Source of the DNA: Lepidodermella squamata
Lineage: Eukaryota; Animalia; Gastrotricha
Assembly (NCBI GenBank): GCA_047495785.1
Contig: JBLDXI010000015.1
Location: 558,001-622,000, forward strand
Direction of reading: 5' to 3'
Length of the DNA: 64,000 bases
Part shown: in pieces, positions 1-53,724 of the stretch
How positions within the stretch are numbered: the stretch's first letter is position 1
Layout of the letters: every line of letters starts with the position of its first letter
Translations under genes and position numbers: made by a program
The notes under the pieces: generated by a model
What the model was told of the DNA's origin: nothing
The model's database searches: none
Seen by the model: only the letters and a program-made list of their open reading frames with translations

Positions 1-886
1 CAGCGCAGTCGCAAATGTTTGGCCCAGCACAAGTGCCACCATTCTTGCAGGTAACCGTTGTGCAGAGAGCTATGGCAATGGCACGGACTTTGAACATGCC
101 ACCATGAATGCAGCAGAGACGTTGACTTACAAATGTCGCAATTTGCACCACTCCAGGCGCTTGAACAGCTGCAAATGTTTGCGCCGACACAAGTTTGCCG
201 GCTGTTACAATTCGAGCAAGTATCTAACCATTTTAGAAAAGAAGGGTCAATTAATAATGACAAATATTCGTCTCTTACATTTATTGCAAGTTGTTCCCGA
301 GTAGCCACTAGGGCAGATGCAAGTACCAGAACTGTAGGTTCCGCCGTTAAGGCAGACGATAGACTGGGCCTTTAAATCGTCCCGTATAAATTATAAATGC
401 AGAACTATTAGATTGCAATTAATTCGACCTATCTATGTATGGTCGCTATCGAATTAATGGTATAGCTACCCAAGCTGGTCTCGACCTTTTTATCTTGAGC
501 ATAATTTGTTTTTCTTCTTGTCGAATAGCTCAATTTCCACGTCTATTAAGTAGAGATCTATGCAATAAAGGTAACTTGGATACCCCGCAAACACTTTTGT
601 CAAATACTCTTTCCTAATTTGGAAATGTATGCTTCGCAAAGAACAAAATTGGACTGCTTCTTTTGAAAGCAACGCCACCCGATGAAGGCCATTACGCATT
701 ATAGTTGACATTACATTGGGTGAATTGTTAAATACGTACCGCTGGGTTTCTGACCTGTTGATTCGAGGTGCAGGCGTGGATCAGACCAGCTGTAACCAGA
801 ACTGATCATCGGTAGAATAAATTTTAGAAATTGTATAAAGACGTCTCAAAACATTTACCGAGAAGTAAAGGTAGGATTACAAGCAT
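1..886 (-). CDS. 5' part of EGF-cathepsin paralog 0 (signal peptide + EGF1-3), truncated by window edge
   Basis: Exons 886-859, 801-740, 369-279, 223-131, 69-<1 with GT-AG sites. They translate as MLVILPLLLVLVTAGLIHA-CTSNQQVRNPA-AQSIVCLNGGTYSSGTCICPSGYSGTTCNK-YTCSNCNSRQTCVGANICSCSSAWSGANCDI-SLCTTVTCKNGGTCAGPNICDCA. The exon layout matches the three downstream paralogs; the protease domain itself is outside the window. Confidence 0.85.
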
Positions 887-2200: not shown

Positions 2201-3656
2201 AGTTGATAACCAGTTGTTACCATGTTTTAAGTTGGGCTGGCCGAGTTTGTGTAAATGTTTTGTTTGAGCTTTCTAAAACTGATAGAATGAGGCTGTGCGG
2301 AAATACGCGAGAATAGTGTGCCGCTATTTGTTGGGCTCTTCCAGGTAAAAAATTCACAAAATATAGCCAAATATAGCTTCGCTGGCAGGTGACTCAACGC
2401 CCTATATATATTTAGCTCAGCTGCCATTTTTTCACGGTATCGATCTTAAAAATTAAAAATACGCCAATTCTCTCAAAAAGCGCTCTAACGTACGATTTGT
2501 CGTAAGAAGATGATAGCTAGTTTAGAAAAATTGAGGCCTATGCGAGCGATATTTTTCTGGACTATATGCTGAGAGAATGACCGAGGTATCTCCAGCTCAC
2601 AAGGTCTACTTCGCACTATTCATTATTCATGTAGGACTATTCATTATAATCATCAATTTTCTAATCATTTTATCGCGAACAGCAAGCATTCGCTTCGAAA
2701 TTTAGATTGCAGACTATAGCTATGTCGGCTAAGATACCAAGAATACATTACGTTTTGAGATTGAGGGTGTGAAACATACTCATACTCATACTCTTAATTA
2801 ATGAAAGTTGCCTTTCGACATTTAGCATTCGGTATCAGACATCATCGCAAGGCTTATGAGTCAACCATTCCCATGGTTGATGGTCGAACCATGGTCCCCA
2901 GGCTTTGCGTTTTGCGTGCTGATTAGCCATATCTTGATTGCCGGTGAATAGCGTCCTACACCGGGAGGGAGGAAACCGCGGACTCGGGGGGATTTGCTTG
3001 ACGGTGATCCCAGCATGTACGCACTCGAGGATTGTGCCCTTGGCTTCGTAATCGGCGATACGTCTTCATGTCAGCTTGATTTACGGTCCCAGAAACGCCG
3101 CATTCAAAGCGTAGAAGACTGATTGGTGTTGCTGTTCTGGTGATTGAACCCTTGCCTCTTCGCCGCCAGAGAGACGGCTATATGAATCTCGTTGCCCGAT
3201 GGGTCACCCGATGGGCTCTTACGTGAATTTGATTACAATTAAGGCTATTCTGTTCAGTTGTTCCTCGCTGCAATTCATTCAAAATTAATATACATATTAT
3301 TGGAGTTTTATTGCGAGTTAATTCATGTATCCTGCATCCTGCATATTTTTAAGGTCTAAATTTTTGCCAATGATAGGCTAGCGCTGCCAACAAGCTACCA
3401 GTTACGCCACCCGAGTAAGCTCTTTGTTCAGCTGAGCGCACTTCGATCAGCTTTCGCAAAGTTCCTGCTATCTACCCGGTTGCCCGGTTGCCAGAAGATT
3501 GACGTCAGTAAAGCAGCTGTTTAGCTGACAATGTATTCTTCGAGTGTATCATCAAAAAGCCCTTTATATAATACCGCGAGCTTCTGAATTTTATCATTCA
3601 TTTTCGCTATTAACTTTACTGAGTTTCAATACTTTGTTCTATTCATTCCAGGCTAA

Positions 3657-6600
3657 ATGCTAGTCAAAGCTCTGCCCGCGCTGTTTTTGCGTAAGTTTCC
3701 GCTGTTATGTTCCAACAATTCACAATTTCTTTTAATTCTTTTTAAGAGCTTGCATTGTTCGAACTGCTTGCTAATGGTAATCTCTTAAACTTGAAGCCTA
3801 ATAAAGGGCTTATCAAGTCGAACGTGACCATCAACGTCAAGCCAAAAGCGCAGATTCGGCTCAATAGCACAACACCTTTCTACTTCTGCAATATGACCAC
3901 TGTCCGGCCGAAAACTGTGAAACCGAGTGCCCCGACTGTGGGTAAGAAGCCGAAAGCTCCTGCAAAACCAACAAACGGAACTACAGTGGCCACCACTAAG
4001 CCGAAAAGCGGAGTTTCCCCCAAGCCGAAAGCTCCTGCAATGCCGAAGAAACCGAATACGGCGAATGCTACTGCGCCAAATAGTGGGAAGCCAGCCAAGC
4101 CGAAGAACGGAGTGTCCCCCAAGCCGAAAGCTCTCTCAACGCCGAAGAAACCGAATACGGTGATTACTACTACACCGAAAAGCGGAGTCAAACCCAAGCC
4201 GGTAGCTCCTCCATCGCCGAAAGGAGGTGAGTAACTCAGTTCATTGTGAATCATTGTGCGAAGAAGGAACTGAGGTGTTTTTCCAGCACCCAGCCGAAAA
4301 ACCCAAAGGGTTTCCCTCATTTTTTTCACTCGTTCTCTGTTTGGAATCCCGGAGCTGGGGGGTCCCTTGAACCTCGCACCCTGCTTTGAATCGCAATCGA
4401 TTTTCCCGGCGTTTTATTATTCCAAAAAGTATTCAAATTTCTTCCCTTCCTAAATACAGTCGTGACGTGGCGTCAAGTTTTATATAAATATAACAGCTCA
4501 TTTGACTTTCACAGCGGTATGCAAAACACCTTGCGCGAACGGTGGAACTTGTGCTGCTGGCAACACGTGCAAGTGCGCCGCTGGATGGACTGGACCTGCT
4601 TGCGAGAAGTGTAAGCTCCTATTCCTATACAATATACAATACAAAATTGATCGCCATCATACAATGGCTTTCGCCTCTTGCTTTTCCAATGCAATGCGGT
4701 TAAGTATCATTCCGATTTTAATGTTCATATATTCACATTTCTCAGCTGAGTGTTCGAAACCATGCGAAAATGGCGGGACGTGCAACGGACCTGAAAGCTG
4801 CAAATGCAATGATTTGTTCTCTGGACCAACCTGTTCTCAAGGTATACTGCATATTTTCAAATATTTCGAAATACAGCTTTCCCAAATCAAATTGTAAATA
4901 TAAGCTTATTTGAATGTTTTCCATTAACAGCGGTATGCAAAACCCCTTGCGCAAACGGTGGAACTTGCGCTGCTGGCAAAGCTGGCAACACATGCCAGTG
5001 CACTGCCGGATGGACTGGAACGGCTTGCGAGAAGTGTAAGATCTTTAGCAACGCAATTATTATCACAATTTACAATTCATACCATTCCAGCTGAGTGTTC
5101 GAGACTATGTGAAAATGGTGGGACCTGCAACGGGGTTGAGAGCTGCAAATGTAATTCATTGTTCTCAGGACCGACCTGTTCTCAAGGTACGCTATCCAGA
5201 TCTGTTAATTTATCGAGTATAATACATATTTGTTATTTTAGCAAAATTATTCGTACCAGAAAAGGGTCTTGATGTCACTTTCGAAGAAGCTTCGGAACTT
5301 TGCAAAAAGGCCAACGCAAGACTGTTCACGCCCAAAGATCAATCGCAACTCGACGCCTTCAGGTCCTATCTCAAGGGAGGTCAATCACCATCACGTCCTA
5401 TTTGGATCGGGGCGGCGTCGTCTGCTTACGCTTGGGGCAACAACAAGCCTGTTGATAACTCGATGTGGAACACGAAAACGGAAGCTGGTGATGCAGAATG
5501 TATAAGTTTTTCAGTCGTAACGGAATAGTTGAAATAATCAGTGTTTCAATTTCCCTGATGAAGGCGTAGAGCTCTACACTAACCTCCCAAACAGGGGTCA
5601 ACCGATGAAAGGAACCGGCCTGCTGACTGTTGACTGTGCAAAAAAGTACAAGGGTGTCATTTGCCAGGATACTAAATCGGTATAGCTTATATCGAAATCA
5701 TCTATATCTTACGCAAATTTGCCTTTGTTTCAGTTTCTCATGCAAGCATTCGAGTTAGACGGCGATCGAGCTGCTGCGATGAAATTGTGCGAGCGGGAAG
5801 GAATGCGACTGCCCATCCTCAGTGATCCCAGTCAGTTCGAAGCAGCTAACAGCGTTCTTCAAGAGGCGTTTTATGCCTACGAGGATAAGTCTGTTCCTGT
5901 CTGGGCAAGCAGACTGCCTGGGGCAAATCTCGATCCTGCTAGCAAGGGAATGTCTCCAGCCCGTAAGTATCCCCGAAAATGTGCTCTATTGTCAAAATGT
6001 AACATGATTACTGGATTTCGCCTTCAGATGTCCAATACATCTACCCATCCAATACTGTATCGCCTAAACCGGCCACTGATAAGGGAACGGCGATTTGCGA
6101 ACGATTCACTGGTGAGTTATCAGTTCACCGCTAGACTGGCCTCGAATTTCTCTTGAAATTTTAAGCAACTTGCACACCCGCTTGCGAGAATGGCGGAACA
6201 TGCACTGATACGAATGTCTGTGCCTGTGCTGATGGTTTTGTAGGGCCAACCTGTAGCAAATGTGAGCTAGCATTTTAGTGCTTGATGAGTTTAATACAAT
6301 ATGTTTCTTCGCGCATAGCCAAATACTTCAAGGTGCCGACCGTTGGCCCCGCGCCATATGGACCATATTGTCCATATGGTGCTTGCGAAGCTGCCGGCGG
6401 TGTTTTGGCTTCCATTCGCACGCCAGGTGAAGCCGAGCAAGCGAAAGCTGTTGCCGGCAAGTCGTACAGGGGAGTCTTCATTGGCCTCGGTGTTCTATAT
6501 GCATTCTATGGAACCAGTAGCCCTGGTATTTATAAGCGAGTCCCCATGTGACCGGGTCCGATTGGCTGGAAAGTCAGCAGCGATACAGCATATCAAGGGG

Positions 6601-7250
6601 GATGTAAGGCTCTAGCTCTAGTTTGAAATGGCATTTACTTGAATTGAAATCTTTCAATCAGGCTTACGAATCGAAAAAGAAGGTTTTTCCACTGCCCCTT
6701 GCGATGGTTTGGGCCCGTATGGTTTATGCGGCAATTATAAGGTAAGACTGCTGAATTCCCAACATTTCAAAAAGTTCAATTTTTCTCATTTTCATGCGCT
6801 GTCAGACGAGAGAAATCACAAACATCGTATACAACAATCAGGATGGGCGGTTGGACACGTTTTATAAGTTGTGTTCCCAAGGCAATCGCGAAATTGGCCT
6901 CTGGTCGATCGACACTCTCGCAGATTTCGCAAAAGTAGAGAAAATGTTTTCATCAATCGTTAAAACCTTAGCCGTGAATGGCAATCGCTATGGCACTCGT
7001 GAATTTAGCCATGCTTCAGGAGAGAAGATGGACCACAAGACCTTCCCTATCCCATGGGCTAAAGACGCCCAGTTTGTAGTGGGGAATGGATGTAAGTTAT
7101 TCGATAGAGCACCGATGCCCGAAAATACGATTCTCCCATTTTAGGCGTTGTCCTGCGGTCTGATGGATTCATTGAAGACTCGTCTTGCTACTGGACGAGT
7201 AGTCGAGAGGAAGATAGACCCGCAGCACTATGCAGCGTGAAGCCTGAATA
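3657..7250 (+). CDS. Secreted Pro/Lys/Thr-rich + 5 EGF + 4 divergent C-type lectin-like domain protein
   Basis: Signal peptide MLVKALPALFLQLALFELLANG; KPK-rich exon; four phase-1 EGF exons (4515-4610, 4746-4841, 4931-5035, 5091-5186). CTL-like domains (TFEEASELCKKANARL..IWIGA..C..DC..VICQ; AAAMKLCEREGMRLP; ACEAAGGVLASI..VFIGL; KLCSQ..CVVL..ALCS) with a fifth EGF between CTL2 and CTL3. Stop TAA 7248-7250, AATAAA near 7312. In-frame TGA at 6549-6551 (see findings). Confidence 0.8.
4001..4221 (+). repeat. Imperfect coding tandem repeat (KPKSGVSPKPKAPAMPKKPNT-like, ~3 units)
   Basis: Units of the form ccgaaaagcggagtttcccccaagccgaaagctc...ccgaagaaaccgaatacgg recur at ~4001 and ~4100, with a partial unit at ~4175. 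Confidence 0.8.
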
Positions 7251-8012: not shown

Positions 8013-10747
8013 TCACTTGAAGTAGGGCCACACAACACTGTTTTCTATGGCGCATCTATTAACGCCTTTGCGGATTTTGAAATAGCCTTTTATGCCCCAA
8101 CTGGTACCCCACGAATTGCGGCCAATCCAGTACTCCTCGTTAGTTATCGGTTCCACGCCGTATCCAACAATAACCACGTCATGGTTGACATTGGTCGGGC
8201 AGTCTTTAAAGTCAAAAACGCCTTCCTTGTAGGCCTGGAATCTTGACTCGGCGTGCATATCGACCTGAATCGGACCGTACTGCAAAGCGTCCATCATTTT
8301 CTTTACCATTGTTGATCTCAAAATTTGGTTTGTTGTCGTCAGCGTATCGGCGGATTCGACATATGACAGACCGGTTATCGGCAATGGCGAAGTTTTAACG
8401 GTACTTAAAACACAAGAGCCCTCCTTTTGCGTATACGGGTAATCCTCCCCTCTCGCAAAGACTTTGGCCGACCTGTAGTAAGCCACCACGCCTCTGAAAT
8501 TGCCGCCGTTGCAACCATTCGCAACTACACCTGTGTTCCTGGCGCAGTCCACCAGCTGTTGTTCAGACATTAAAACGGGAACGGCTTTGTTTTTCAGCGC
8601 CAGACGGGACTCGATGACCGTATTAGCTGCGAACGTGTAGCACGAACCGCATTCCTGCTGGTTTTTTATCGGCGTTAAATAGCCTTTTATTCTCCAGTCA
8701 AGTGTAGCACCTGCAAATCAAATAATACTTATAGATTACAGATGGAATCGCTCGCAATTAATACGGTTGATGTGATACTAGTCACTAGTCATACAATTCG
8801 CTTCGTGAAGTGCAACTTTTATGCACGTCGAGAGGTGTTTTATTTTCCCTTAGTTTTTTTTCTCTCAGCTCATGCGATTTTGTACCTTAATCATATGGGT
8901 TTAGAGTGTCAAAATAAAAGCTCGGGGAACTTCTTGGTTGAGGAACAACAAGTCTTCGACAATGTTTATGTATATTTAGGTAAACTCTGGCTTTTCTAGC
9001 AATCATGAATCGCGATGAAAATTCATTCAAACAAGGCCCCTATGGTTTCAGCTCGCGAAATTTGCACTGCAGAAATTTTGCAAATGAGCCTATATAAGCC
9101 CTATCAAATCAGGAAAAAATTGCCTAAATGAAATCAAATCAAAGTTATACTGCCAAGTGAACGTTGAAATGTAACGAGAGTAGGCTTACGAATCTAAAGC
9201 GCTGTTTTCACTGGGCTATATTCATCGAGGTATCTTAATAATTTAGTGGTATTTCCACATCGTAGTTTTCTCAGGCTCCTTTTTCAACCCAGCTCATTTT
9301 TCTTAAGAATAAAGGCATAAGAGGTAAAAGGCATGAATCACAAACCTGGGATTGGTACCGCATCGTTAGCATCCAACGGAGTCAAACCAGGTGCATTTCC
9401 ATAGTTAGTATCAGCGGGCGGGTAGGAATTGAGTGGCCGAGTCGTGTACAAGTCTCGCTCTAATTTTGTTGTATCAACTTTGTCATTATAAACAACGCAA
9501 GTCTTCCGGCCAGTCTCCACTCCATCATCCTTCTCGATCCAGCATAAAATCACATCGTTTCCGACCTGAGTCTGAGTGTACGAGTAATTGACTTCGCGCT
9601 TCCGCCTCCGCTTGCTGCTCACGGTAGTATCTTTTCCAAGCAGATTTTTCTTCTTCCATTCGTCCGTCTTTGCACTGTATTGATTCAGGCCGTACTTCAC
9701 ATCAGGATTGTCCGAGTCCTTGTTCCATTCGTCGATTTCGTCGATTTCTTTCAGCAGAGTTGCTTCCGCTGCATCGTCATCCCCATCGCTAGCGATGTCG
9801 GAATCTGGATACAGTTTTTTGAAAGCTGCCCATCTGGGATCTTCAGTAGCTAAGGATTATAATTATTCAATACGTTAACAATAACCGATCACCAAAGATT
9901 CAACCTTACCGCAAGACGGGCCCGAATAGTCCTTCGAGAGACATTTGCACGTGTTTTTTCCAATACAAGTTGCGCCATTTTGGCAGAAATTCGCCGGGCA
10001 TCCTGCTGAAAGAAAAACGAGCTCTTTTAAGTATCAAGTATAAATAAAAACAAGCAAGGAGGAATTTCAAAGTTGAAAATGCAGGATGAGAAAGGGAGAT
10101 GAAAGATGGGTTCGCCGCACGCAGGACTCCTTCGAGGAGTTCAACTTACATGTTCCACAGTCGGTTCCAAACCAACCAACAGGGCAGTCGCAGATGTTAG
10201 GTCCCGAACATGTCCCGCCGTTCCTGCACGTAATCGTTGTACATAGCGCTAAAACAATTATTTCAACGTCTCGATTTCAGTTTCTTAGCGAGAGGGGCGG
10301 TCATTATCCCTACATATATCGCAATTTGCCCCGGTCCAACCGCTCGAACAGCTACAGATGTTTGCCCCAACACAGGTTTGTCGGCTGTTACAATTCGAGC
10401 AAGTAACTATGTTCGTTTCCGAAAGATGAATCAATGCAAAATCTTACGGCTAAATTTCTTACACTTATTGCATGTTGTCCCCGAGTAGCCCGTTGGGCAG
10501 ATGCAAGTTCCAGAACTGGAGCTGTATGTTCCACCGTTGAGGCAGAAAACAGACTGGGCCTACCAGAATAGAGTCATTTTAACGTATTTCTACACCATTT
10601 TATACTGACGACGGGTTTTTGAGATTGTTGAGCCGGGGTGCATGCGTAGATTGACTCAACAGACACCAGAACTGATTATTGACAGGATATATCTGATTAG
10701 GATTTATCCCTGAGAAAATGTTTACCCATCAGAGAGAGTACAAGCAT
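8013..10747 (-). CDS. EGF-repeat papain-like (C1A) cysteine protease, paralog A, intact
   Basis: 8 phase-compatible exons: 10747-10726, 10671-10610, 10559-10463, 10406-10314, 10248-10150, 10005-9910, 9849-9346, 8710-8013. Catalytic motifs QQECGSCYTF, NHDVVIVGYG, YWIGRNSWG. I29-like prodomain (KYGLNQYSAKT) followed by KRRRKR. Confidence 0.92.
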
Positions 10748-11339
10748 TTAACTCGTGTTTGGTGCTGCTAACTGTGAAAAATGATATTGCACCAATATTT
10801 TGCACATGTGTTTGATGCTCAAAGATTCACATTTTCGCTCACGCGCTTGAGCCTAATGCTATTGTTTTGCCGCCGCCTTCTATAAGATTTTGTACCGCGT
10901 GGATTTTAGCAATTTAACTCTGGATTAAATGGCATTTTGCGTGATGGTCTTTAGTAAAACACGTTTTTCTTTTTATTTGAGAAATATTCACCAAGCTGGC
11001 CGTGTGCATAAACCGGAAACGCAATAAGGGTAGAACGAGCATCAGTTGCTAAGTGAGACGACTTGAGCCCATAGGATAAATTTGAAACTGAACGCAGTAT
11101 CCTCTTAAAAGCGCGGCGTGAAAATGTGACCACTTGTGAGCATTTTGAGAAAATATCATTGCCTCCAGCGATTCTCTTCTCAGTTGCCTGGGCCTAAAGG
11201 TGCCTGAACTCTTCTCAGGTGATGGCCCTTAGTTCTCTAACGAGCAGCAGCGCCGATTCGCGATTCGCCCAAGCAGGACTCACACCGTACAAAAGACAAA
11301 AGGCAAACTAGCCGCGTGATGGGTAGTTTCCTGGCATTT

Positions 11340-11600
11340 CAGTAATGCCAGGAGCTGCCATTTGCCGAATGAGATTGAACAGGGTTGGCGATAGCTCTGG
11401 AAGCGCCGGAAGAGACTTCAGCTGCACACTTGGGTTTTCAGACCGCGGGCCTCGAAGCCCATCCTTTCATGAAGGCAATAGTCTTTTTCCGAAGCAGCTC
11501 GCAGTGGAGCTGAATATATTGAGGTAATTCATGATTGCGGCCCGTCTTATCGAAAGCTTGCTTAAAATGTACCACGGCACAAGTCTCCACCCTTCGTAGG
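11340..11600 (-). mobile_element. Degenerate LINE reverse-transcriptase remnant
   Basis: Minus strand gives ETCAVVHFKQAFDK (11546-11587, cf. AILLDFKAAFD) and ELSPTLFNLI (11368-11397, cf. GSPLSPLLF) in the expected order, with frameshifts and stops between. Confidence 0.6.
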
Positions 11601-11887
11601 CTTTTCAAACGAGCCCCACACTAGCGACCAGTTGGAAAGAGCGCCGGGACTCGAGATAAACATGAAACCTTGCTACGAATGAGACTGCTGATATGTTACT
11701 TTTCAACCGTTCATGGTACGACAGCGAGCGATGGCTCAAAAAAAACAGGCGAGAGTTCTCGTTCGAACGGATGTTGCCGCGCGAAAAAAGTCCACGAATA
11801 TACAAAATTCTGAGTGAATAAACTGATTCGAAAGTTTCTTGGACATAGTAAAGTAATGTTGCTAGTAGTGTAGTTATCATTCTGCAG

Positions 11888-12637
11888 CAGCGGTTCGCAA
11901 AGTGGCGCACCCGTGCGCATTGGCGCATTGGCGCACGCGGAGCCTTTGAGCCAACTCGCTCTGGCCAGCGATTCCACCCCTTCTATGGACGTTTTATAAG
12001 TTGAAGGACATCGGTTTTCTGTCATTTTTAGGCTATTTTCAGCTTTTTAAGAGTGGAAATAATAAAAATTTGGCTCGCTTCGCTCGCCAGGTTTCTTCCG
12101 TTAAACTCCATGAAAGCTAGGTGTTCGATTTTCTAGGTTTAGGTAGTGTGTTCAAGCATGCTACACATGTCAAAATGTAACAACTAATCGGAATGAATGT
12201 AATAACCAAAGTCGAAGTCTGGAAGAAACTGCTAAATCCTCGTTTTTAGAAGATTTCGGAGCCTTTTTAGAGGGAAAATCCTCAAAATTTCCTCGCATCG
12301 CTCGTATAATTTGTTCAGATAACCTATAATTTGAACCAATGCGGAACGCGGAACACACATGTTCATTTTTGAGCGAGGTAACTTGCAACCATAGACATTA
12401 TTCAGTCTATGCTAGCAACAAAAAGTTTCTAACAACCAATATTGACCTATGATATAATATGAAGAAGTTCAACTTGGCAAAATTCGCAGAAACCCAAATT
12501 ATTCATGAGAAACATCTTGAATATTAGTTCTTTGCAATTAGTTCTTGAGGAGAATATAATATGCAAGAGTGGCGCACGTGGGACCGGCCGCGTGCGCCAC
12601 TCTTGCGCATCTGGGTAAAGGTATTTGCGAACCACTG
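11888..12637. mobile_element. 750-bp non-autonomous hAT-type DNA transposon (MITE)
   Basis: 14-bp TIRs CAGCGGTTCGCAAA (11888-11901) and TTTGCGAACCACTG (12624-12637), 13/14 match. Perfect 8-bp TSD TTCTGCAG at 11880-11887 and 12638-12645. Subterminal TGGCGCA repeats at both ends; no transposase ORF. Confidence 0.9.
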
Positions 12638-12871
12638 TTCTGCAGATAAACGATTACCTATATATTATATACGGGTTTAAAGCTTCTTTGATTTAGACGG
12701 AATTAAAGTGGTCTTATTTCGCCGTATTGGTCACCTCTGTCGTTGAAAGTGATTACGGCCTGCAAATATGCGCAACGGAAGGGCCCAAGTTCTGTGTGTG
12801 TTATATATAATTTTATTGCAATCAATATGAATCAAAATAAAGGAAACCGGAACATAACAGCAACGCAATAA

Positions 12872-15800
12872 TTACTTGAAATATGGCAAGCCCATGTAGC
12901 CCTCGATGCCGCATCTGTTTATGCCTTTTCGGATCTTGAAGTAGCCCTTAATGCCCCAAGAATCGCCCCACGAATTTCGCCCGATCCAGTAGTCCAATTT
13001 TGACGTGGGATCTGTGCCGTATCCAAGAATAACAATCGCATGATTAGTGGAAGTCGCACAGTTTGGTGGATCGAGAATGCCGTCTTTGTAAACATCGAAT
13101 TGCCCCTCAGCGTTAATGCTGGCGTAGATCGGACCATACTTTAGAGCATCCATCATTTTTTTAATCATTTGCTCCTGAGGAAGCTGATCGTAGTTCGTTA
13201 GCGATGTAGCTCCTCTCAGTCTCAGGTATCCGTTAACATTCATTGCAGTACCAGTATTGAAAGTACACAACGCTTTGTCGCTATTTGTATATTTATAGTC
13301 GTCAGCTTTGGCGAAAGCTTTAACTTTGGTAAAATATTTGAAAGTCGTAGTATCGTCCCCGCCATCGCAGCCGTTGTTACCGCCGTTCACTTTAGAACAA
13401 TCGACGATTTGCTGCTCGGACATAGAAATCGGAGAGACTGCGTTTTTGATGGCCCACCGAGCTTCGAGGACAGCGGATGATGCGAATGAATAGCAGGAAC
13501 CGCATTGTTGTTGGTTCTTTATTGGGGTCATGTAGCCTGCAAAAAGTAGCACAAATTATCGACTTCAAAGTGCGTCTCAACATCAACTCTAACATAACTG
13601 AAGCTGTGATAAATGGCTATTTCAGGCTGGATTTTGGGCAGTGATGATGTTTGGTATTAAGCGGAAGTGAGTTGGTTAAACAGATAGCTTTTCAAGTTTC
13701 TAGCACGTCTAGAGTCTAGAATCGCAATTAAGGCCAAATTTGGGCGAAATCAGCAGAAAATCAAATGGGCCCTCAATAAATCAGGACGGTCATATCGTAT
13801 TCAGTCAGTCATGATAAAGGATACTTGTCGGCATGCAAACGTGAATACTTGCCGGCAGAATCCCATCCTCTTTACCTAGCACTCATAGTTTGGCTGGGAA
13901 GAAAGCCATTTGACCGGCAGTGAAAAGTCGGGTTTGGTGATTTTCTGTATTTTCCATTGCGATTTGCTAGAAATTTTCCAGCAAATCACAAAAGTCTTCA
14001 AAACGTGTGTTCACTTGATGAAGGACGAATTGGATTCCAAAATGTCACTATTCAGTTATTCTTGTTGCTTTAAAATGTTCGAATTAAAGGCCTCTAAAAC
14101 AGAAAACCCAGAGTTGCCCTGAAAAGTGTTATCCATTCAGGTTGTCGTAGAGACTTTGCTTGATCCCAACAAATTTATGAAGATCTAGCGAGATTCCTCA
14201 CTTCAGATTACGCTATAAAATGTCGACTGTGTATTAGAAAAAAAAACATAATTTATTCAGTGGGGGATTCTGCTGATCCATTTTCAAGCGCGCATTTCTT
14301 AACATCGATTATTTTTTCGCTTGTGAACTGTGAACCCCTCTGCAATTTTCTCTGCAATGCTGAGGAATATTAATCTCTTTTTGAGTATCATCGAAATCTC
14401 TCGATGTTCACAATTTCGCCGAACCCCTTTTTCACTTAAACACCATTTAACATTTCAAAAACATGTTGAACCACGCCGAAAATGGAATTTTCTACCATAT
14501 TTCGAATTGAAAACATTGGTAAACGCTATCTACTAGACGCTTTCTGCGCGCGGATTGCTAAAGCCTTTCTCCCAATGAATCCCGGCCACTAGGATTATAA
14601 GAGATACCGATGCTAATATTATAAATCATCGATTGTCGATTGTTATCTGTGTGATGTGTGATTTTCTCAGCTTACCTTTAACTCGCCAATCGATGACAGC
14701 TCCAGCCATCGGTGCAGCATCATCCGTTGAGACAGTCAGCGTGGGCGCAGTATTGAACTCCGGGTCTGACGGGAATGATTTTAATGACCGTGTTGTATAC
14801 AGCTCGCGCCGCTGAGGCGTTAAATCAACCGTTCCAGTGCCATCAAGGCATCGCTTGCGATCAGGGCCGATATCCTTCCCATCTTCTTGTTCAACAACGC
14901 ATAGTGTACATTTCAAGGTGTCGCAAACTGCAGGCGGCGAAAAGAAGACAATCTCTCGCTTGCGTCTCCGGCGGCCGCTAGCATCGTCTGTCGTAGTCAC
15001 AGGCTTAAAGCCGAGCAAGTTCTTCTTGCGCCAAGCGTCCGTTTTCGCGCTGTATTGGTTGATGCCAAACTTGACGTTTTTATTCGCTGGATCTGCCGAC
15101 AGCTTGTCGATTTCACCCAAATCTTTCAACAACTCAGTCTCGCCTTCTTCATCTTCATCCTCAGTGTCGATTTCCGCGTCTGGATACAGCTTTTTGAAGG
15201 CTGTCCAGCGCGGATCATCGTAAGCTGGTTGTTGAGCTAAGATATATATTGCGGAAAACTTATGACTGTTGGTATAGGCTGAATAAAAACTCACGCTGGG
15301 CTGAAATAAAGAAGAGGGATCAATAATTATTCCATATATAATGTTTCCAAGCTTACAGCAATTTGCGCCGGAGTAGGCAGCTATGCATTTGCAAGTGTTT
15401 TTTCCGATACAAGTTCCGCCGTTTTGGCAATAATCCACCGAGCATCCAACTGAAATGAAATAGATTTTGATACAAAAAGGAGGCAGTGAGAATTGAGAAG
15501 GGATCCGAACGACGTTAATGGGACCTGTTCTCGAAAGGTAAATACAAGAGCAGAATCCGCCAGTCGGATTTCATCGGGTTTCCCCAACAAAAGTTGGAGT
15601 TTAACCCCATTCAAAACAAAACAAAGGGAACAAAGAAAATCAGAGGCGCCAAACTGTAGCTTATCCACTTTCTTAACTTACATGTACTGCAATCGGCTCC
15701 ATACCAGCCAGTAGCGCAGTCGCAGATGTTAGGCCCGGAACAAGTGCCGCCATTCTTGCACGTTACCGTTGTGCACAGAGCTAAGACAATTGCATCGATT

Positions 15801-16522
15801 TTACATCATGCATGCGGGGAAGACGTTGACTTACAAACGTCGCAATTTGCACCAGTCCAGGCACTTGAGCAGCTGCATACGTTAGCCCCAACACAAGTCT
15901 GGCGACTGTTGCAATTCGAACAAGTAACTATGAACAAAATAGATCAATGGATGATGGCGGCTATTTCGTCTTTTACATTTATCGCATGTTGTTCCCGAAT
16001 AGCCACTAGGACAGTTGCAAGTTCCAGAACTTGAACTGTAGGTTCCGCCGTTAAGACAGACGATAGACTGGGCCTAGAAATGGTCGCGTTGCGTTTGAAA
16101 CGAGAAACAATTACAAAATAGAGTAATGTGCCGTTTCATAACTCTTATCATAATTCTCATCATCCACTATTCAGCTATTCAGCCGGGCCGGGGAAATTCC
16201 ATCAAATCCTCAATCAAAGCCCCCCCCCCCCCCCCCACCCTTGATCCGAAGAAAAGCTGGGTGGCTCCTTACTAACGAAACTCGGCGTAATTTGATTTAC
16301 AATCGAACCATTATAATCGAACCACATTTCGACATTATAATAATATAAAATTGGATGCAGTCTCAATACATACCGCCGGGTTTCTAGACTGCTGATTCGA
16401 GGTACATGCGTGAATTGACCCAGCTGAAACCAGAACTGGCCATTTGTATGTTAATTATGGAAATTTCAGTTAAAAAAATTATTATCGGAATTACCGAGGA
16501 ATGAATGGAGGATCAGAAACAT
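12872..16522 (-). CDS. EGF-repeat papain-like (C1A) cysteine protease, paralog B, intact
   Basis: Exons 16522-16495, 16435-16374, 16073-15977, 15927-15835, 15780-15682, 15449-15357, putative microexon 15300-15295, 15236-14676, 13536-12872. Motifs QQQCGSCYSF, NHAIVILGYG, YWIGRNSWG; RRRRKR after the I29-like region. Confidence 0.92.
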
Positions 16523-17079
16523 GGTTGCTGATTTATGGCAACAAACGTTATGAAAATTTCAACTGCAAAAATTCTCTGTGTGGTATGGCGTAGTTATGTG
16601 ACGTTTGAATATATTGCACTCATATGCAACATGCCATTGTTTTGCCACCCACCACCTAAAAACAATTGCACCATACAAACATGAGCAATTTAGCATTGTA
16701 TTACTGTGTTCTACATCTTAAATGATTTCACATATTTGTGTTAACTGAGCGGCTAAAGAATTCGTGGAGGCAGATTTCAACGGATTTTGTACTTGAATTA
16801 ATTAAAGGAATCCAATTTGTGCGCCTGGATTCCTCGAAAAGCCATACGTCGCCGTGCCGACTGGTTTCAACTTCTATTAATTTTTTTCAGGGGGCTATCA
16901 TAAATCGATTACGCTCTATTGTATACTGTTGTGTAAAAGGTCATAAATCTGAAGACTCAATCGAACTGTTACTTTCATCAACAACGGTTTAGTGTTAACA
17001 GCATGGGGCATAGATAGGTTAGGCACAACAATTGTGGAAGCATGTAGCCAGCATTGATTTCGTTCATTAGGCGCACTTT

Positions 17080-19386
17080 TCACTTGAAGTACGGCCACAC
17101 TACACTGTTCTCTATGCCGCATCTATTGAGGCCTTTACGGATTTTGAAATAGCCGTTAATGCCGAAAGATGTACCCCAAGAGTTGCGGCCAATCCAATAC
17201 TCTTCGCTAGTTGTCGGCTCCACGCCGTATCCAACAAGAACCACGTCATGATTCGTATTATTCGGGCAGTCTTTAAAGTCAAAAACGCCTTCCTTATAGG
17301 CCTGGAATCTCGATTCGGCGTGCATATCGACCTGAATTGGGCCGTACTGCAAAGCGTCCATCATTTTCTTCACCATTGTTGATCTATCAGCGGAGGTGAT
17401 ATATGACAGGCCGGTTATCGGCAGTGGCAAGGCTTTGCCTGTATTCAAAGCGCAAGAGCCTTCCTTTTGCGTATACGGGTAATCCTCAGCCTTCGCAAAC
17501 GCCTTGACCGACCTGTAGTAGGTCACAACGCCCCTCATATTACCACCGTTGCAACCATTCGCACCCGCACTCGTGCCCTTGGCACAGTCCACCAGCTGTT
17601 GTTCAGACATTACAACGGGAATTGCGTTGTTTTTCAGCGCCAGACGAGACTCGATGACCGTGTTCGCTGCGAACGTGTAGCATGAGCCACATTGCTGTTG
17701 GTTTTTGATAGGCGTTAGGTAACCTTTCGTTCTCCAGTCGACTATAGCACCTTAAGATATCAATTACCAATTAGCGATTAAAATTGCCGTGAAAACAACT
17801 AAACAAATTAATAACCCAAATTATTCAACCCTATACACTTACAAAACTCCCCTATTCTGATTCTACCATCGAAACTATTTTGTTCACGAACAATGAAAGT
17901 AGAATCAGCGGATAAACTACCCGGTATTGCTGTGGCAGTCTCCAAAGGAGTAAAACTTGGTGCATTTCCATAGTTGGTATCAACAGGTGGGTAGGAGTTA
18001 AGTGGCCGGGTGGTGTATAGATCTCGCTCTAACTTCGCCGTATCCACGTTGCCATCGTTAATAACGCAAGTCTTCCTACCAGTCTCCACCCCATCGTCCT
18101 TCTCAATCCAGCATAGAAGCCACTTGTCGTTGACGAGAGTCTGAGTGTAGGAGTGCTCAACCTCTCGCTTCCGTCTCCGCTTGCTCCCGCTGGCCGGCGC
18201 CCCGGGATTAACGGCAGGCGGCGTCCTCGTCGTGCTGTCTTTCACGCCTCCAAGCAGATTTATCTGCTTATATTCGTCGGTTTTCGCACTGTACTGATTC
18301 AGGCCGTACTTAACGTCAGGATTTTCCGTGTCCTTGTTCCATTCGTCAATGTCGCTCACTTCTTTGAGGAGAGTGGCCTCAGCTGCGTCATCCTCCGCAT
18401 CGGTGGTAATACCAGAATCTGGGTACAGTTTTTTGAACGCTACCCATCTCGGATCATCGGGAGCTGTGAGTTATTTTAATACTTTCAAATGATTGAAAGT
18501 TTCGGAAAATTCAAGCTTACCGCAAGCTGGGTATGTGAATAGGCCATCGATTCGCATTTGCAGGTGTTTTTTCCAATGCAAGTTCCGCCATTTTGGCAAA
18601 ATCCTGCGGAGCATCCAGCTAAAAGAAAAACAAAGCCCATTCAAGTGTCAAAATCAATATTGCAGATGAAGAAATAATGAATAGGTTGGCTAATGCAACA
18701 AGAAGAATGAAATCGTGCTTTTTTTAGCGATTAGCGAGCTTTGCCACTCTTGGAACTCCTTCACGAACTTCAACTCACATGTACTGCAATCAGTTCCAAA
18801 CCATCCAGCAGAGCAGTCGCAAATGTTGGGGCCGGAACAGGTGCCGCCATTCTTGCAGGTAACAGTCGTACACAGAGCTAAGAAAGTTAGCATACGGCTT
18901 TAGCACGGTTTCTTCGCGAGATGGAGCAGTTTATTCTTACAAATGTCGCAATTTGTTCCGGTCCATGCGTTTGAACAGCTGCAGATGTTGGCACCGACAC
19001 AAGTTTGCCGGTTGTTGCAATTCGAGCAAGTATCTATGTATGTGAAATATTACAAAATTGATCGGAAGTCTTTGCTGTTAGGGCTATTACACTTATTGCA
19101 TGTTGTGCCGGAGTAGCCGGTAGGGCAGATGCAAGCTCCAGAAGTGGAACTGTAGATTCCGCCGTTAAGACAGACAACAGACTGAGTCTGGCAAAAGAAT
19201 GCGTGGAAAATTTTGGGAAAGCGGAACATTCCCCAATGCTCACTGTAGGTTTTTGAGACTGTTGGGTTGGAGCACATGCGTGGATTGGCCCAACAGACAC
19301 CAGAACTGATCATTGGTTGGGCAAATTATAGTCGAAATGTTAGAGAAAAATCAAAAGGTTAAACTCAGCAACATAGTTAGAAGCAT
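17080..19386 (-). pseudogene. EGF-repeat papain-like protease, paralog C; +2 frameshift in EGF4 exon (pseudogene, or 3-EGF form by exon skipping)
   Basis: Same exon layout as paralog A with an intact catalytic exon (17750-17080). The EGF4 exon 18618-18521 is 98 nt instead of 96 (TCA-CATAC-CCAGCTTGCG vs TCG-GGC-CCGTCTTGCG), giving a TAG early in the next exon. Confidence 0.7.
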
Positions 19387-20003: not shown

Positions 20004-20957
20004 CTAGTTATATTCAAATTTGAGGTAACTTCGTAGCGACAGAGGTAGATGGCGTTCTAGGCCTTCATCAATGGCTTTTCTACGGCTGATATATCCTCGC
20101 GGCAGGCATCTAAGGATCGCCAAACGGGCTGAAAACTGCAACGTCAATGGGAAGGCGTTTACATTGGTAAATGCCACAGCCAAATCAGGCCTATCCTTCA
20201 AATACTCATTCACATGCAAATCCGGAATTTTTCTCATATTAAAAGAGCCATCTTCCCGAGCTGAAAGAAGTATGTCGATGAGGCTTGTTTCTTCGCTATA
20301 ATTCGACGCCCGACTACCGAAATCTTTCGACAGATCCTCTCCTTGCATTCGCCTTGCTAATCGAATCAGCCCAACCGCTGTCAATTCGTACCCGGTGTAA
20401 CCAGGGCAGCCAGATTTGACCAGGAGTGATATCGATTTTGTTACGTAATAATTGCAAGCATTCCTAATCAAGTAATGCATCTCCATAGTAACGAGGCGAT
20501 CCAACGGGTTCAACGCATCTTTCCTTTGATGGAGATGGACCAAAGATTCACTGATAGGAGATTTTAGTAGTAATTCAATTGAAGAAAGTCCGCCATGGTG
20601 GATAGCTGCATTCAAAGCAGTAAATCCGCTGGAATTTACTGATTCTAGCAACAACAGACCGTTCTCATGTTCAACCACTGCTTTGAGAACCTCTTCGCCG
20701 TATCCATCCATCAATCCTAAGTAATGAATGATTTTTTTACCGTTTGCATGCGTCTCCATGATGTCGGCTCCATTTCGAATCAGTCTAGGTAACACAACAT
20801 GTTGACGCCATCTGTAAGCGTGGAATAAGGAGCAAGTAGCGCCGCGGTCCAGTAAGTCGTTAATTGCTGTGAAATCTCCTCTCTCGATCGCTTGCTCCAA
20901 ATTTATGGTCGATATGTAAGTAGCGAGTTTCTCCTTAGCTTTAGTGACTAACCACAT
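20004..20957 (-). CDS. Ankyrin-repeat and SOCS-box protein (ASB-like E3 ligase adaptor), apparently single-exon
   Basis: Ankyrin-like segments (LEQAIERGDFTAINDLLDRGA; GFTALNAAIHHGGLSSIELLL) and C-terminal SOCS box PLTLQFSARLAIL..LPLSLRSYL. First ATG at 20957; the ORF track starts at an upstream GTG. Confidence 0.8.
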   Translation of the reverse strand: MWLVTKAKEKLATYISTINLEQAIERGDFTAINDLLDRGATCSLFHAYRWRQHVVLPRLIRNGADIMETHANGKKIIHYLGLMDGYGEEVLKAVVEHENGLLLLESVNSSGFTALNAAIHHGGLSSIELLLKSPISESLVHLHQRKDALNPLDRLVTMEMHYLIRNACNYYVTKSISLLVKSGCPGYTGYELTAVGLIRLARRMQGEDLSKDFGSRASNYSEETSLIDILLSAREDGSFNMRKIPDLHVNEYLKDRPDLAVAFTNVNAFPLTLQFSARLAILRCLPRGYISRRKAIDEGLERHLPLSLRSYLKFEYN

Positions 20958-21161
20958 GGTGAGGGATAATTCTATAAAATGAACAATGATACATGATAAG
21001 CCTACTTCATATCTCACAAACTTAGGTTTAGGTGGATAAGAAATGAAGAAACCTGCTATGCTTGGCACTTGAAAGCATGAGCAAGATAAGATTAAGAAGT
21101 TTGAACAAATAAATTGATTCCTCTTATGTTCTATTTCTTATGTTCTATAAATTTTGAAGAA

Positions 21162-24100
21162 ATGAAAAGGCGTCGTTTTATCTTTGCATTCATCGGTAAG
21201 TTTGAAGATCTTAAGTTTTCTTATGGCTTAAATTTTTCACTTAGGCGTTGTCTCCTTCTTTCTGAGTTCTATCTCTGCAGAAGATGGACTCTTACAGACT
21301 CCATACCCAACTTTCCCACCTGAAAGTCTCCTAATGAATTGCAATTTCGAGACTGGAGATTGGTGTGATTTCGAATCTACCAATGGTTGGGTTCTATCAT
21401 GTGGTCCTGATTCAAACTGTTCCTCGAAAGGTCTTATCAACGATCACACAACTGGTTCACCAGATGGCCACTACTGGCTGGCGAATCTTAACGGCCCAGC
21501 TGTTGTAGCACAGCTTGCAGCTCGTTTTCGGTCTGATGTACCGGGTTGCCTCAGCTTTTGGTATTACGTTGATGGCGCTGAAGTATCTAGCCTTAAGCTC
21601 GGGCTGAGTGAGGATATTTATTGGAAAAGGGATGGGACTCAAGGTCCGCAATGGAACTACGCTGAGGTTACACTTAGCCCATCAGGGGATAGTCCTCAGG
21701 TATAACTATTTTCCATAAAATTGATAGCTAGACTTCAAATTATTATTTTAGAATCAAATGTATTACCAAGCCAACATTGGCGAGTCATTTGATGGTTTTG
21801 TTGCCATTGATGACGTGAAGCTAGCAGACACAATCTGCCCATCACGAGACCTAGAGTGCAATTTCGACGCAGATTACCGAGATTTGATAGCTCCATGTAA
21901 TGCTACTGTGAGTTCATCCACATGGAATGGACCTCCAGTCGACATGCAGTGGCAGTTTGGCCAGCGGCCTGATGGCGATCACACATGGCGAACACCGAAG
22001 GGAACTATGGCTTTTGTAACAACCAACTTGACAGAATCTACCACAACATACTTGCTATCTTTGCCGTTTAAATTGACCACAGGCGTAAAAGAATTTTGTT
22101 TGAAAGCTTGGTAAGTATAATTCATTTCCGACTCTGAAGTATATTGACCATTGATTACTCTATCAGGTATAGAAGTGATCCTGGAATTGATGGCTTTGTA
22201 CGTCTAAGTGTCAATAATCTGATTATCGAATCAATTCATCTCGACTGGTTGGGGAACACCTGGTTTTCGCAGGAATCGACTGCAACTTTAGATTGTAAGT
22301 TGTGATGAACGTCCAATTGTTGCTCTATCGATTTCTTTTGAAAAGCTGACCCAGAAAATGGTATAGTCAACATTGGATTCGAAGCAAATATTCAGTCGAT
22401 GGAGAGGCCAAATTCGTACATCCAGCTGGATGACGTGCAGATTCTCGAGCAAGCTTGTGAACAGTCAGGTATAGGATCATTCTATAGAATCGAAGTAGGC
22501 ACGAAGTAGGATCCTCGTACTAGGGGGTATATTTTCGACCCCAATTTTTTGACCAAATGGTCCCCCAATGAACCTTTGACCTTGCGAACTGGTGGTACGA
22601 TACCCCTCCCCCTTCCCCTAACCCCTTCTCCCTCCAAAACCTATGAGGTGTCTAGCCTGGACATCTCAAACTAGGGATACTATGATACCCCTTTATCGTT
22701 TAACTGCACCCAAATGCTTTTCTCCTTCTAGAAATTTGCGACTTTGAAGACGGTCATTTCTGCCCCTGGTCAAATATTCAGTACCCAAAGAAAGATTTTG
22801 ACTGGCGGCTAGGATCTGGTGCTGACAATGGCCCTATCCCTATCGACACGACGTTTGGGAAGCCTAATGGTCATTACATGTACGTAAAAATGGATCAACC
22901 TAACCTTACGCGTGGTCAGCATGCAGTTTTTGTTTCAAACAACCCGAGGCCATTTACCGAATTCGGCTGTCTCCACTTTTCATACTTTATCAAATCAAGT
23001 GGTTCCTACCTGAAAGTTAAGGCTATTCGTAAGGACGGTGATACTACTTCATGGCAGTCCCCGATCACATTTTCAAACGATACGTGGCAATCCGGCTACG
23101 TCGCTATCTATCTGGGCTTAGTAAACACGCTGGAGTGTGAAATCGGTTTCGAAGCCATTTACGATAGTTCGAGCCAAGACGATGTCATAGCCATTGATGA
23201 TTTGTTCACTCAACCTTCTCCTTTAAATCCCAAAGGATCATGTGGCGAAAATCAGGTTATGCCCTTAGACGCTAATCCCTTAGCAACTGCATCTCCCTTT
23301 TTGAGCTGTGATTTTTCCAAGAGCAACGACTATTGCCACTATAACCCGGTCAACTTTGACGGAAATTCAATGTGGTCCCTTTCGGAAGACAAGTTGGATC
23401 AATTGCAGTCGGCTAGTATTACCTATTTAGCGACAGACAAGAATTTTCAAGCTGATATCACATCACGATTTGTCGAGGGAAACGAAGGCTATCCGCTATG
23501 CGTCATTTTTAACTACGCTTTTCACGGTGTCAATCCCGGAACCTTTTCTCTTTTCTCAATCATCGGAAACGAGCAAAAGGTGTTATGGTCAAGATCCGGC
23601 TCGCAAGGCTACAGATACCAAAGGGGCCATGTGGCCATCACGAGTGAATACGGACTTGATTTCAAAGTATTTTTCAGAGTAAAAGCTCCATTCTCATTCG
23701 GAGATGTGGAACAGACCTGGTCTGGGTCACTTTCGATAAGATCTATCGAGGTTTCATCACAACATTGCCAATTATGGGATGAAACTGCATTTTGCGACTT
23801 CGAAATTGATCTTTGTAACTGGGGCTTGGATCCTTTCTCAGCTTGGAAGTGGGGCCAAGTTCAGTTATCAGGTGGCGTCGTTGCTAATGACCACTCAACT
23901 GGAACAGGACTCGGTCACGCTGTTTACACCCAAATTAAAGGATCGGGCGCTACGATGACTGATAATCTTCTACCAAACTCTCAGATTTTCGAGTCTGATA
24001 CCGACCGATGTCTTCAATTCTGGTACATTTACAAGGCCTTACAACCGTCTAAAATCGGAGCCGCGGCAGTATACGTCGACTATTCCGAAGTCTCAACTTT

Positions 24101-53432: not shown

Positions 53433-53724
53433 GCTTTCAATTTGAAACTTCATCCGTTGGAGACAATCTTTTATTTCTCAAGTCCCCTACTTTATCGGAA
53501 CATCTTAACCCGATCTTAATACCTTATTTCGAAAGTGTCATCCTCTTCTGCTGCAGCTAACGAGTTGCTTAACGGACTGGCGCCAAATGTTTCTCAGATT
53601 ATTCAACGCCATCGAGCTAGCTAATTTGCCCAGATTCGGCTGTGAAGTCTGAACGCTAGAAATTCTTACCTACATACATGCTGAGGCTTGGCGTTAGCTT
53701 TCAAATATCAGTTTGCATCACATA

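What the first reader, a model, noticed from the sequence alone, without database searches (positions are those of the whole stretch)
8013..19386. Tandem family of secreted EGF-cathepsins with a furin site and an ~85-aa insert between propeptide and catalytic domain
Seen: paralogs A, B and C share signal peptide, 4 EGF exons, a degenerate I29 region (ERFNIN replaced by acidic DDAAEATLLKEIDEIDEWN; GNFD appears as GLNQYSA), then (K/R)RRRKR (A: 9596-9613), then a conserved ~85-aa Cys-containing segment (LC.(I/V)E..DG...G..RK.C....VD.T...R.LYTTR.L.S.P) before DWR. Paralog 0 shows the same 5' exons. Known: cathepsin L-like zymogens have short linkers, lack N-terminal EGFs and usually autoactivate at acid pH; RxKR is the furin/proprotein-convertase consensus. 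Inference: convertase cleavage would release an EGF+I29 fragment and leave an enzyme with an extra N-terminal module, suited to non-lysosomal extracellular action. I do not recognise this architecture; it is my best candidate for an undescribed system here.
Basis: partly seen in the sequence, partly recalled or inferred. Interest (0 to 1): 0.8.

Follow-up and report, generated by a model that had tools for sequence, protein, structure and literature searches.

The report
Convertase-site cathepsins with new mini-domain
A microscopic animal, probably a gastrotrich, has 15 papain-type protease genes with a furin-type cutting site and a small folded module found in no other searched protein; nine of them, including those here, also carry four EGF modules, which points to an unusual way of switching these enzymes on, but neither expression nor cleavage has been shown.

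Summary
A (556 aa) and B (565 aa) are intact 8-exon genes: signal peptide, four EGF exons, degenerate acidic I29, R-x-K/R-R, an ~84-aa cysteine insert and an intact Cys-His-Asn papain domain. C has a frame break in EGF exon 6, also present in short-read contigs. The genome holds exactly 15 insert genes; all 15 keep the site, against 3 of 81 outside cathepsins. Six are intronless and lack EGF, so the I29-site-insert-protease order is shown without splicing and EGF is optional. The insert has no sequence relative among 1.84 billion proteins. AlphaFold folds it as three strands plus a helix (pLDDT 82-93) and an arm that is ordered only beside the catalytic domain; no specific fold match. The ERFNIN Arg and GNFD Asp linked to acid autoactivation are lost in all 14 aligned copies. 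Best reading (0.6): convertase-primed secreted zymogens whose mature enzyme keeps a variable specificity module. No RNA run was found; splicing and cleavage remain inferred. The scan noted this family before on other DNA of this genome (s1-407711, s1-422038). New variant of a known kind.

The parts
10726..10747 (-). Paralog A exon 1, start of signal peptide
   Evidence: ATG, GT donor
10610..10671 (-). Paralog A exon 2, end of signal peptide and an unpaired Cys at the predicted mature N-terminus
   Evidence: cleavage point judged by eye
9910..10559 (-). Paralog A exons 3-6, four EGF modules (10463-10559, 10314-10406, 10150-10248, 9910-10005), phases 0-1, 1-1, 1-1, 1-1
   Evidence: pooled dN/dS 0.06-0.10 between paralogs
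9635..9849 (-). Paralog A degenerate acidic I29 propeptide (5' part of exon 7)
   Evidence: Pfam I29 E 0.011, below cut-off; motif columns
9596..9613 (-). Paralog A polybasic site KRRRKR (R-x-K-R core 9596-9607)
9346..9595 (-). Paralog A insert: three-strand meander, helix and arm, two invariant Cys (3' part of exon 7)
   Evidence: structure modelled on an intronless paralog
8013..8710 (-). Paralog A exon 8, papain-family catalytic domain with Gln19, Cys25, His159, Asn175; Asp at S2 positions 133 and 160
16374..16522 (-). Paralog B exons 1-2 (16495-16522, 16374-16435), signal peptide
15357..16073 (-). Paralog B exons 3-6, four EGF modules (15977-16073, 15835-15927, 15682-15780, 15357-15449)
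14676..15236 (-). Paralog B exon 7: I29, site at 14956-14967, insert with four Cys, and DWR in the same exon
12872..13536 (-). Paralog B exon 8, catalytic domain, triad intact, Asp at S2 positions 67 and 68
19244..19386 (-). Paralog C exons 1-2 (19365-19386, 19244-19305), signal peptide; first donor is a weak GTTTAA
18779..19187 (-). Paralog C exons 3-5, three EGF modules
18521..18618 (-). Paralog C exon 6, fourth EGF, 98 nt, breaks the reading phase
   Evidence: same letters in short-read contig 18114-19110
17921..18463 (-). Paralog C exon 7: I29, site at 18165-18176, insert
17080..17750 (-). Paralog C exon 8, catalytic domain, triad intact
1..886 (-). Paralog 0, exons 1-4 (859-886, 740-801, 279-369, 131-223) and most of exon 5; the rest lies left of the window and is open (G000:C15:553895-556854)

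Best explanation
These are secreted cathepsin-L-type zymogens of a 15-gene family confined, so far, to this genome. The chain is signal peptide, optional four EGF, I29 propeptide, flexible linker, R-x-K/R-R, a compact disulfide-stapled module (three strands, one helix), a 30-aa arm and the catalytic domain (shown for sequence order; fold predicted). A furin-like convertase in the secretory route cuts after the last Arg (inferred). This separates the EGF+I29 part (about 24 kDa in A and B) from a mature enzyme of about 35 kDa that keeps the module (inferred). The I29 still works as chaperone and cleft-blocking inhibitor, probably staying bound until secretion or dilution, but has lost the Arg and Asp tied to acid-triggered self-activation (loss shown, consequence inferred). 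The module and arm pack on the catalytic domain, probably at the unprimed end of the cleft, and tune substrate access differently in each paralog (model-based hint). The EGF cassette, on the discarded side of the cut, holds or spaces the latent complex and is not needed for the core mechanism.
For: Intronless single-frame paralogs show the domain order without splicing. Site in 15 of 15, P4 and P1 Arg invariant, P1' acidic in 12 of 15, linker between the cleft Gly and the P4 Arg 9-24 aa and unalignable; 3 of 81 outside cathepsins have such a site. Linker pLDDT under 50, so exposed. Convertase loci present. ERFNIN Arg replaced by Ala, Glu or Gly and GNFD Asp by Ala, Ser or His in 14 of 14, while Ile, Gly and Asn and the cleft Gly are kept; these residues form the salt bridges whose loss starts acid activation (PMC4842899; title of PMID 29322360 as cited in PMC7720491). 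I29 is under strong purifying selection (dN/dS 0.06-0.16). Insert pLDDT 82-93 in context; its arm falls to 50-59 when folded alone. Insert is the fastest part in most pairs (dN/dS 0.18-0.51; column consensus 0.48 in the meander, 0.68 in the arm). In the wide structural search the cathepsin C chain aligns from model residue 91 to its exclusion-domain residue 65 with 231 residues aligned, more than any other C1A chain listed.
Against: No RNA or protein evidence. No coordinates or domain-orientation error estimates were available, the insert alignment has only 15 rows, pTM is 0.74, and the I29 itself is weakly modelled (pLDDT 47-70), so docking is not shown. No extra Cys ties the insert to the catalytic domain in most members (7 Cys), so later trimming is possible. 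Polybasic sites can also be cut by trypsin-like enzymes. One genome only.
Confidence: 0.6

Rival explanations
1. The insert is a second pro-segment. Convertase cleavage only primes the zymogen; the module keeps it latent or helps folding and is trimmed off near DWR at acid pH, leaving an ordinary 25-kDa enzyme.
For: The insert is acidic (net -4 to -9) and the catalytic domains basic (pI 7.7-8.9), as propeptides and their enzymes often are; the model places its start where propeptide tails of solved zymogens lie; no disulfide link to the enzyme.
Against: The site lies at the normal distance of a pro/mature junction from the cleft Gly; the arm is conserved and ordered only beside the catalytic domain; fast change in a folded module fits specificity better than a disposable piece.
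Confidence: 0.2
2. The basic site is cut by the enzymes themselves or by a trypsin-like protease outside the cell, not by a convertase. A and C have Asp at S2 positions 133 and 160, B and 0 have Asp at 68, which could accept Lys/Arg at P2.
For: Acidic S2 residues in all four paralogs of this cluster; an acidic S2 lets cathepsin B take Arg at P2 (PMC9712828).
Against: The six intronless members lack these Asp yet keep the same site; P4 Arg is invariant, which is a convertase and not a papain requirement.
Confidence: 0.1
3. The EGF exons are not spliced to the protease exons; they are a separate or stray cassette of a very common exon type.
For: This EGF exon type is abundant in the genome (149 of 150 scored candidates); no RNA; C has a broken fourth EGF exon.
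Against: Exon 7 in A, B and C begins at an acceptor with no start codon or signal peptide of its own; phases match through all junctions in A and B; the same four-exon cassette precedes exon 7 in nine genes on two contigs; dN/dS 0.06-0.10; introns are 49-300 nt.
Confidence: 0.05
4. The cluster is mostly silent or decaying.
For: No RNA run held the stretch; C carries a frame break.
Against: A, B and the other members have open frames, intact triads and dN/dS well below 1 in every region despite dS of 0.3-1.8.
Confidence: 0.05

Closest known systems
Cathepsin L/V/S/K zymogens (C1A, I29 + Peptidase_C1)
   Same: Catalytic domain: best profile hits are cathepsin V and L (E 5e-48); model superposes on cathepsin S and L at Z 31, rmsd 1.4-1.6 over 211-214 residues; I29 remnant, cleft Gly, three disulfides.
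   Different: Only 34-43% identity to any outside protein; ERFNIN Arg/Asn and GNFD Asp lost; about 80 extra residues; furin-type site; Tyr after the catalytic Cys; optional EGF cassette.
Cathepsin C (dipeptidyl peptidase I) and cathepsin H
   Same: A piece N-terminal to the catalytic domain is kept after processing and sits at the unprimed end of the cleft, carrying a carboxyl group (PMC9712828). Here the model hints at the same place and the cut would expose Glu or Asp in 12 of 15.
   Different: No Pfam exclusion domain; the module lies after the propeptide, not before it; it is 50 aa, three strands and a helix; no Cys link as for the cathepsin H mini-chain (link recalled from memory); exopeptidase activity not tested.
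Falcipain-2/3
   Same: Mature enzyme keeps an N-terminal extension needed for folding (15 aa, PMC4842899); falcipain-3 aligns from model residue 142.
   Different: Much shorter, no folded module, self-activating at pH 5-5.5, no EGF.
TINAG / TINAGL1 (TIN-ag-RP)
   Same: Secreted proteins described as EGF-like domains in front of a papain fold (PMC5361709).
   Different: Cathepsin-B-like, proteolytically inactive, no I29; here four EGF, an I29 and a complete triad.
Salarin-like multi-I29 inhibitors
   Same: Best hit of the exon-7 profile (P0081, XP_063700984.1): I29 repeats each followed by R-x-K-R, so I29 released at a furin-type site has a precedent in sequence.
   Different: No protease domain and no insert.

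Membership tests
Peptidase family C1A (papain) | Peptidase_C1 domain above the curated cut-off | tested here: met
   189-204 bits against cut-off 20.7 in A, B, C
Peptidase family C1A (papain) | Gln19, Cys25, His159, Asn175 | tested here: met
   present in all 15 paralogs
Peptidase family C1A (papain) | Papain fold | tested here: met
   predicted model, Z 31.6, rmsd 1.5, 214 aligned
Peptidase family C1A (papain) | Proteolytic activity | not testable with these tools
   needs recombinant enzyme
Cathepsin L-like subfamily | I29 propeptide | tested here: inconclusive
   11 of 15 members match I29, best E 2.7e-6; A and C below the cut-off, B no match; three helices predicted at low confidence
Cathepsin L-like subfamily | ERFNIN and GNFD motifs | tested here: not met
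   Arg 0/14, Phe 0/14 (Leu), first Asn 0/14, Ile 13/14, last Asn 11/14; Gly and Asn 14/14, Asp 0/14
Cathepsin L-like subfamily | Propeptide joined directly to the mature domain | tested here: not met
   144-156 aa from the GNFD position to Cys25 against median 65
Cathepsin L-like subfamily | Acid autoactivation | not testable with these tools
   needs experiment
Cathepsin C | N-terminal exclusion domain (PF08773) | tested here: not met
   no such Pfam match; insert alone does not retrieve it
Cathepsin C | Catalytic domain groups with cathepsin C | tested here: inconclusive
   branch support 27/64 only; best solved relatives are cathepsin V and L
Cathepsin H | Mini-chain tied to the enzyme by an extra disulfide | tested here: not met
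   7 Cys in the catalytic domain of 13 of 15 members, even Cys count in the insert of 14 of 15
TINAG/TINAGL1 | Inactive cathepsin-B-like domain | tested here: not met
   Cys25 present, L-type domain
Proprotein-convertase substrate | R-x-K/R-R in an exposed loop of a secreted protein | tested here: met
   15 of 15; pLDDT under 50 over residues 77-93; signal peptides seen by eye
Proprotein-convertase substrate | Cleavage by a convertase | not testable with these tools
   needs experiment

The most novel reading that the evidence does not exclude
A convertase-activated papain-family enzyme in which the cut creates a new acidic N-terminus on a small, independently evolved module that closes the unprimed end of the cleft, a convergent counterpart of the cathepsin C exclusion domain that makes these enzymes exopeptidases or narrow processing proteases, diversified by swapping modules, S2 residues and EGF cassettes.
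Probability: 0.2. Interest if true: 0.75.

Novelty: new variant of a known kind. Interest (0 to 1): 0.55.

Why it matters
Cathepsin-L-type enzymes are taken to activate themselves at acid pH or to be activated by other cathepsins or legumain (PMC4842899); four paper searches found no description of a furin-activated one with a retained folded module. A natural family that lost the pH-switch residues and gained a convertase site gives a direct test of what those residues do and of how small add-on modules change papain-fold specificity. The intronless members can be expressed as they stand. The limits are one genome, no expression data and an unknown biological role.

Tried and rejected
Word search with exon 7 of A: nothing. 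Word searches with an intronless proenzyme and with a long paralog: 89 ordinary C1A proteins, none with EGF in their Pfam list, none covering the insert; this is a sample, not an architecture census. Profile of I29+site+insert against 1.84 billion representatives: four hits, all on the I29 part only. Atlas by features: no usable hit for the insert, ordinary cathepsins for the whole protein. Fold searches with the insert model: best Z 4.9, TM at most 0.54 by query, generic three-strand-plus-helix matches; the fold is not claimed to be new. RNA runs: none. Assembly error as cause of the break in C: rejected, though that run may be the source sample. Cathepsin C ancestry: not supported. Nematode cuticle-collagen test gave no match and its control was silent, so it says nothing.
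Full report
Source. The genome has 121.2 Mb in 151 contigs, eukaryotic 18S rRNA, about 44% GC in the window and introns of about 55 nt. These figures fit the published assembly of the gastrotrich Lepidodermella squamata (122 Mb, 157 contigs, 43% GC; PMC11660948). This identification is an inference from assembly statistics, not a sequence match.

Observation. Exon-by-exon reading gives three minus-strand genes with eight exons each, all introns GT-AG. A (10747 to 8013) encodes 556 aa and B (16522 to 12872) 565 aa without internal stops. In C (19386 to 17080) exon 6 has 98 nt and breaks the phase; without that exon the frame is open (528 aa). A short-read contig over 18114-19110 has no difference from the window, so the break is in the DNA. 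Paralog 0 starts at 886 and continues left of the window with open exons. Pfam confirms four EGF modules, a weak I29 and Peptidase_C1. Gln19, Cys25, His159 and Asn175 are present in all family members.

The family. The insert profile finds exactly 15 places in the genome, all in these genes, among 73 matches to the catalytic exon. Nine genes on two contigs have the four EGF exons. Six genes (five on contig 3, one on contig 10) are intronless, start with a signal peptide and run through I29, the basic site, the insert and the catalytic domain in one frame of 443-474 aa, with no EGF. So the core order is shown without any splicing assumption, and EGF is optional. In a catalytic-domain tree the 15 form one clade (100/98), split into the EGF genes (91/74) and the intronless genes (97/84), inside a clade of 22 genes of this genome (98/96). 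Several of the sister genes have an R-x-x-R site followed by 30-42 aa (one 127 aa) before DWR but no Cys module. The simplest order of events is convertase site and arm first, module second, EGF cassette last; this order is inferred and was not tested with a rooted clade test.

The site. R-x-K/R-R is present in 15 of 15, with invariant P4 and P1 Arg. The residue after the cut is Glu in 10, Asp in 2, and Gln, Gly or Ser in one each. The linker from the conserved cleft Gly to the P4 Arg is 9-24 aa and unalignable, and is disordered in the model. Only 3 of 81 outside cathepsins have such a motif in the linker. About ten loci pair a subtilisin domain with a P-domain, so convertases exist. Cleavage is not shown.

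The propeptide. Against canonical I29 the ERFNIN Arg is Ala, Glu or Gly, Phe is Leu or Val, the first Asn is Glu, Asp or Thr, and the GNFD Asp is Ala, Ser or His in 14 of 14, while Ile, Gly, Asn and the cleft Gly stay. A review ties acid activation to breaking salt bridges between propeptide Arg and Asp/Glu residues and names Gly77p as the cleft residue (PMC4842899); a paper cited in PMC7720491 states in its title that the ERFNIN Arg matters for pH-induced activation. The I29 is among the most constrained parts of these genes (dN/dS 0.06-0.16), so it is altered, not decaying. That the switch was replaced by a convertase cut is an inference.

The insert. It is 77-90 aa with two invariant Cys on neighbouring strands and often a second pair. 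AlphaFold on an intronless proenzyme gives strands 95-104, 107-116, 119-130 and helix 135-144 at pLDDT 82-93, then an extended arm at 75-93. Folded alone, the strands and helix reappear at 70-78 but the arm drops to 50-59, which suggests that the arm packs on the catalytic domain. No sequence relative was found among 1.84 billion cluster representatives (four hits, I29 only), in the word searches, in Pfam, in the Atlas or in metagenome contigs. Fold searches give only generic matches (best Z 4.9). In the wide search with the whole model, solved zymogens align from model residues 89-94 onto the tail of their propeptides, and cathepsin C aligns from residue 91 onto its exclusion domain (chain residue 65), 231 residues in all against 205-213 for mature chains that have no long extension. 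This places the module near the unprimed end of the cleft in the model. Only ranges were visible, so it is a hint. The insert changes faster than the rest in most pairs (dN/dS 0.18-0.51), and S2 residues also differ between paralogs: Asp133 with Asp160 in A and C, Asp68 in B and 0.

The EGF cassette. Its exons are short modules of a type that is very common in this genome and also builds the neighbouring gene at 3655-7200. They are under strong purifying selection (pooled dN/dS 0.06-0.10). A and C are mosaics: their first three EGFs are 84-89% identical to those of B and 0 but 49-56% to the other type, while their catalytic exon is 77% identical to a gene of that other type and 50-56% to B and 0. 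The cassette has 23 Cys, with one unpaired Cys at the predicted mature N-terminus. Because it lies before the cut, it would travel with the inhibitor and not with the enzyme. Its role is a guess. Joining to exon 7 is strongly implied by phase, by the lack of another start and by nine repeats of the layout, but no RNA run was found.

Comparison. The catalytic domain is a member of C1A and closest to cathepsin V, L and S. The genes fail two marks of the cathepsin L subfamily (motifs, short junction) but work like its zymogens as far as can be seen. Retained N-terminal pieces are known in cathepsin C, cathepsin H and falcipains (PMC9712828, PMC4842899); EGF-like domains before a papain fold are described for the inactive TINAG proteins (PMC5361709); I29 followed by R-x-K-R occurs in salarin-like inhibitors. 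The combination, and the module itself, were not found in the papers searched. The paper library lacks most subscription journals, and no true architecture search was available.

Earlier notes. The scan had recorded the five intronless genes (s1-407711) and paralog 0 (s1-422038). They agree with this reading and are not independent support. Other notes list further cathepsin fusions in this genome; I did not check them.

Verdict. Real, well-supported in sequence, restricted to one genome so far, mechanism plausible but untested. New variant of a known kind; interest 0.55.

Noticed in passing
window 8013-10747 and 17080-19386: A and C combine the EGF cassette of the B/0 type with a catalytic exon of another subgroup: cassette exchange between tandem paralogs.
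   Followed up: partly
window 8013-8710, 17080-17750, 12872-13536: Acidic S2 pockets: Asp133 with Asp160 in A and C, Asp67/68 in B; may favour basic P2 residues.
   Followed up: partly
window 10610-10671, 16374-16435, 19244-19305, 740-801: A conserved unpaired Cys follows the predicted signal cleavage in the EGF-type genes inspected; could form a dimer link or be lipidated.
   Followed up: partly
window 8711-9345, 13537-14675: The intron between insert and catalytic exon sits before DWR in A and C but after it in B and 0; one paralog has a further intron inside exon 7, and six have none: independent intron gains or losses.
   Followed up: partly
window 3655-7200 (+): Secreted gene with a Pro/Lys/Thr-rich stretch, five EGF exons of the same type (41-61% to the cathepsin EGFs) and lectin-like segments; no Pfam match for the two segments tested.
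   Followed up: partly
window 11888-12637: Possible small non-autonomous element between A and B: 14-nt terminal inverted repeats 722 nt apart and an inner 19-nt hairpin.
   Followed up: no
window 21334-34874 (+): Very large gene with many MAM-like and LDL-receptor-A-like repeats and a C-terminal membrane segment, in exons of up to 1382 codons (read by eye).
   Followed up: no
window 37621-39953, 48721-51123, 53713-56335 (+): Three tandem paralogs resembling class C receptor-like proteins (read by eye); no Pfam match at E 0.001 for the two exons tested.
   Followed up: no
window 42326-46844 (-): Non-LTR retrotransposon: nucleic-acid-binding ORF1 and endonuclease/reverse transcriptase ORF2 in two frames.
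   Followed up: no
window 35729-37157, 20004-21068, 62280-62696: Ligand-gated ion channel subunit, ankyrin-repeat gene and trypsin-like exon.
   Followed up: no
L017 (G000:C6:266618-269848): Sister cathepsin with a 300-aa acidic repeat before the I29 and a 127-aa Pro/Arg-rich linker after RRKR.
   Followed up: partly
L034, L037 (contigs 31, 34): Canonical-type cathepsin L genes with long Thr/Lys-rich linkers between I29 and DWR; another way this genome extends the junction.
   Followed up: no
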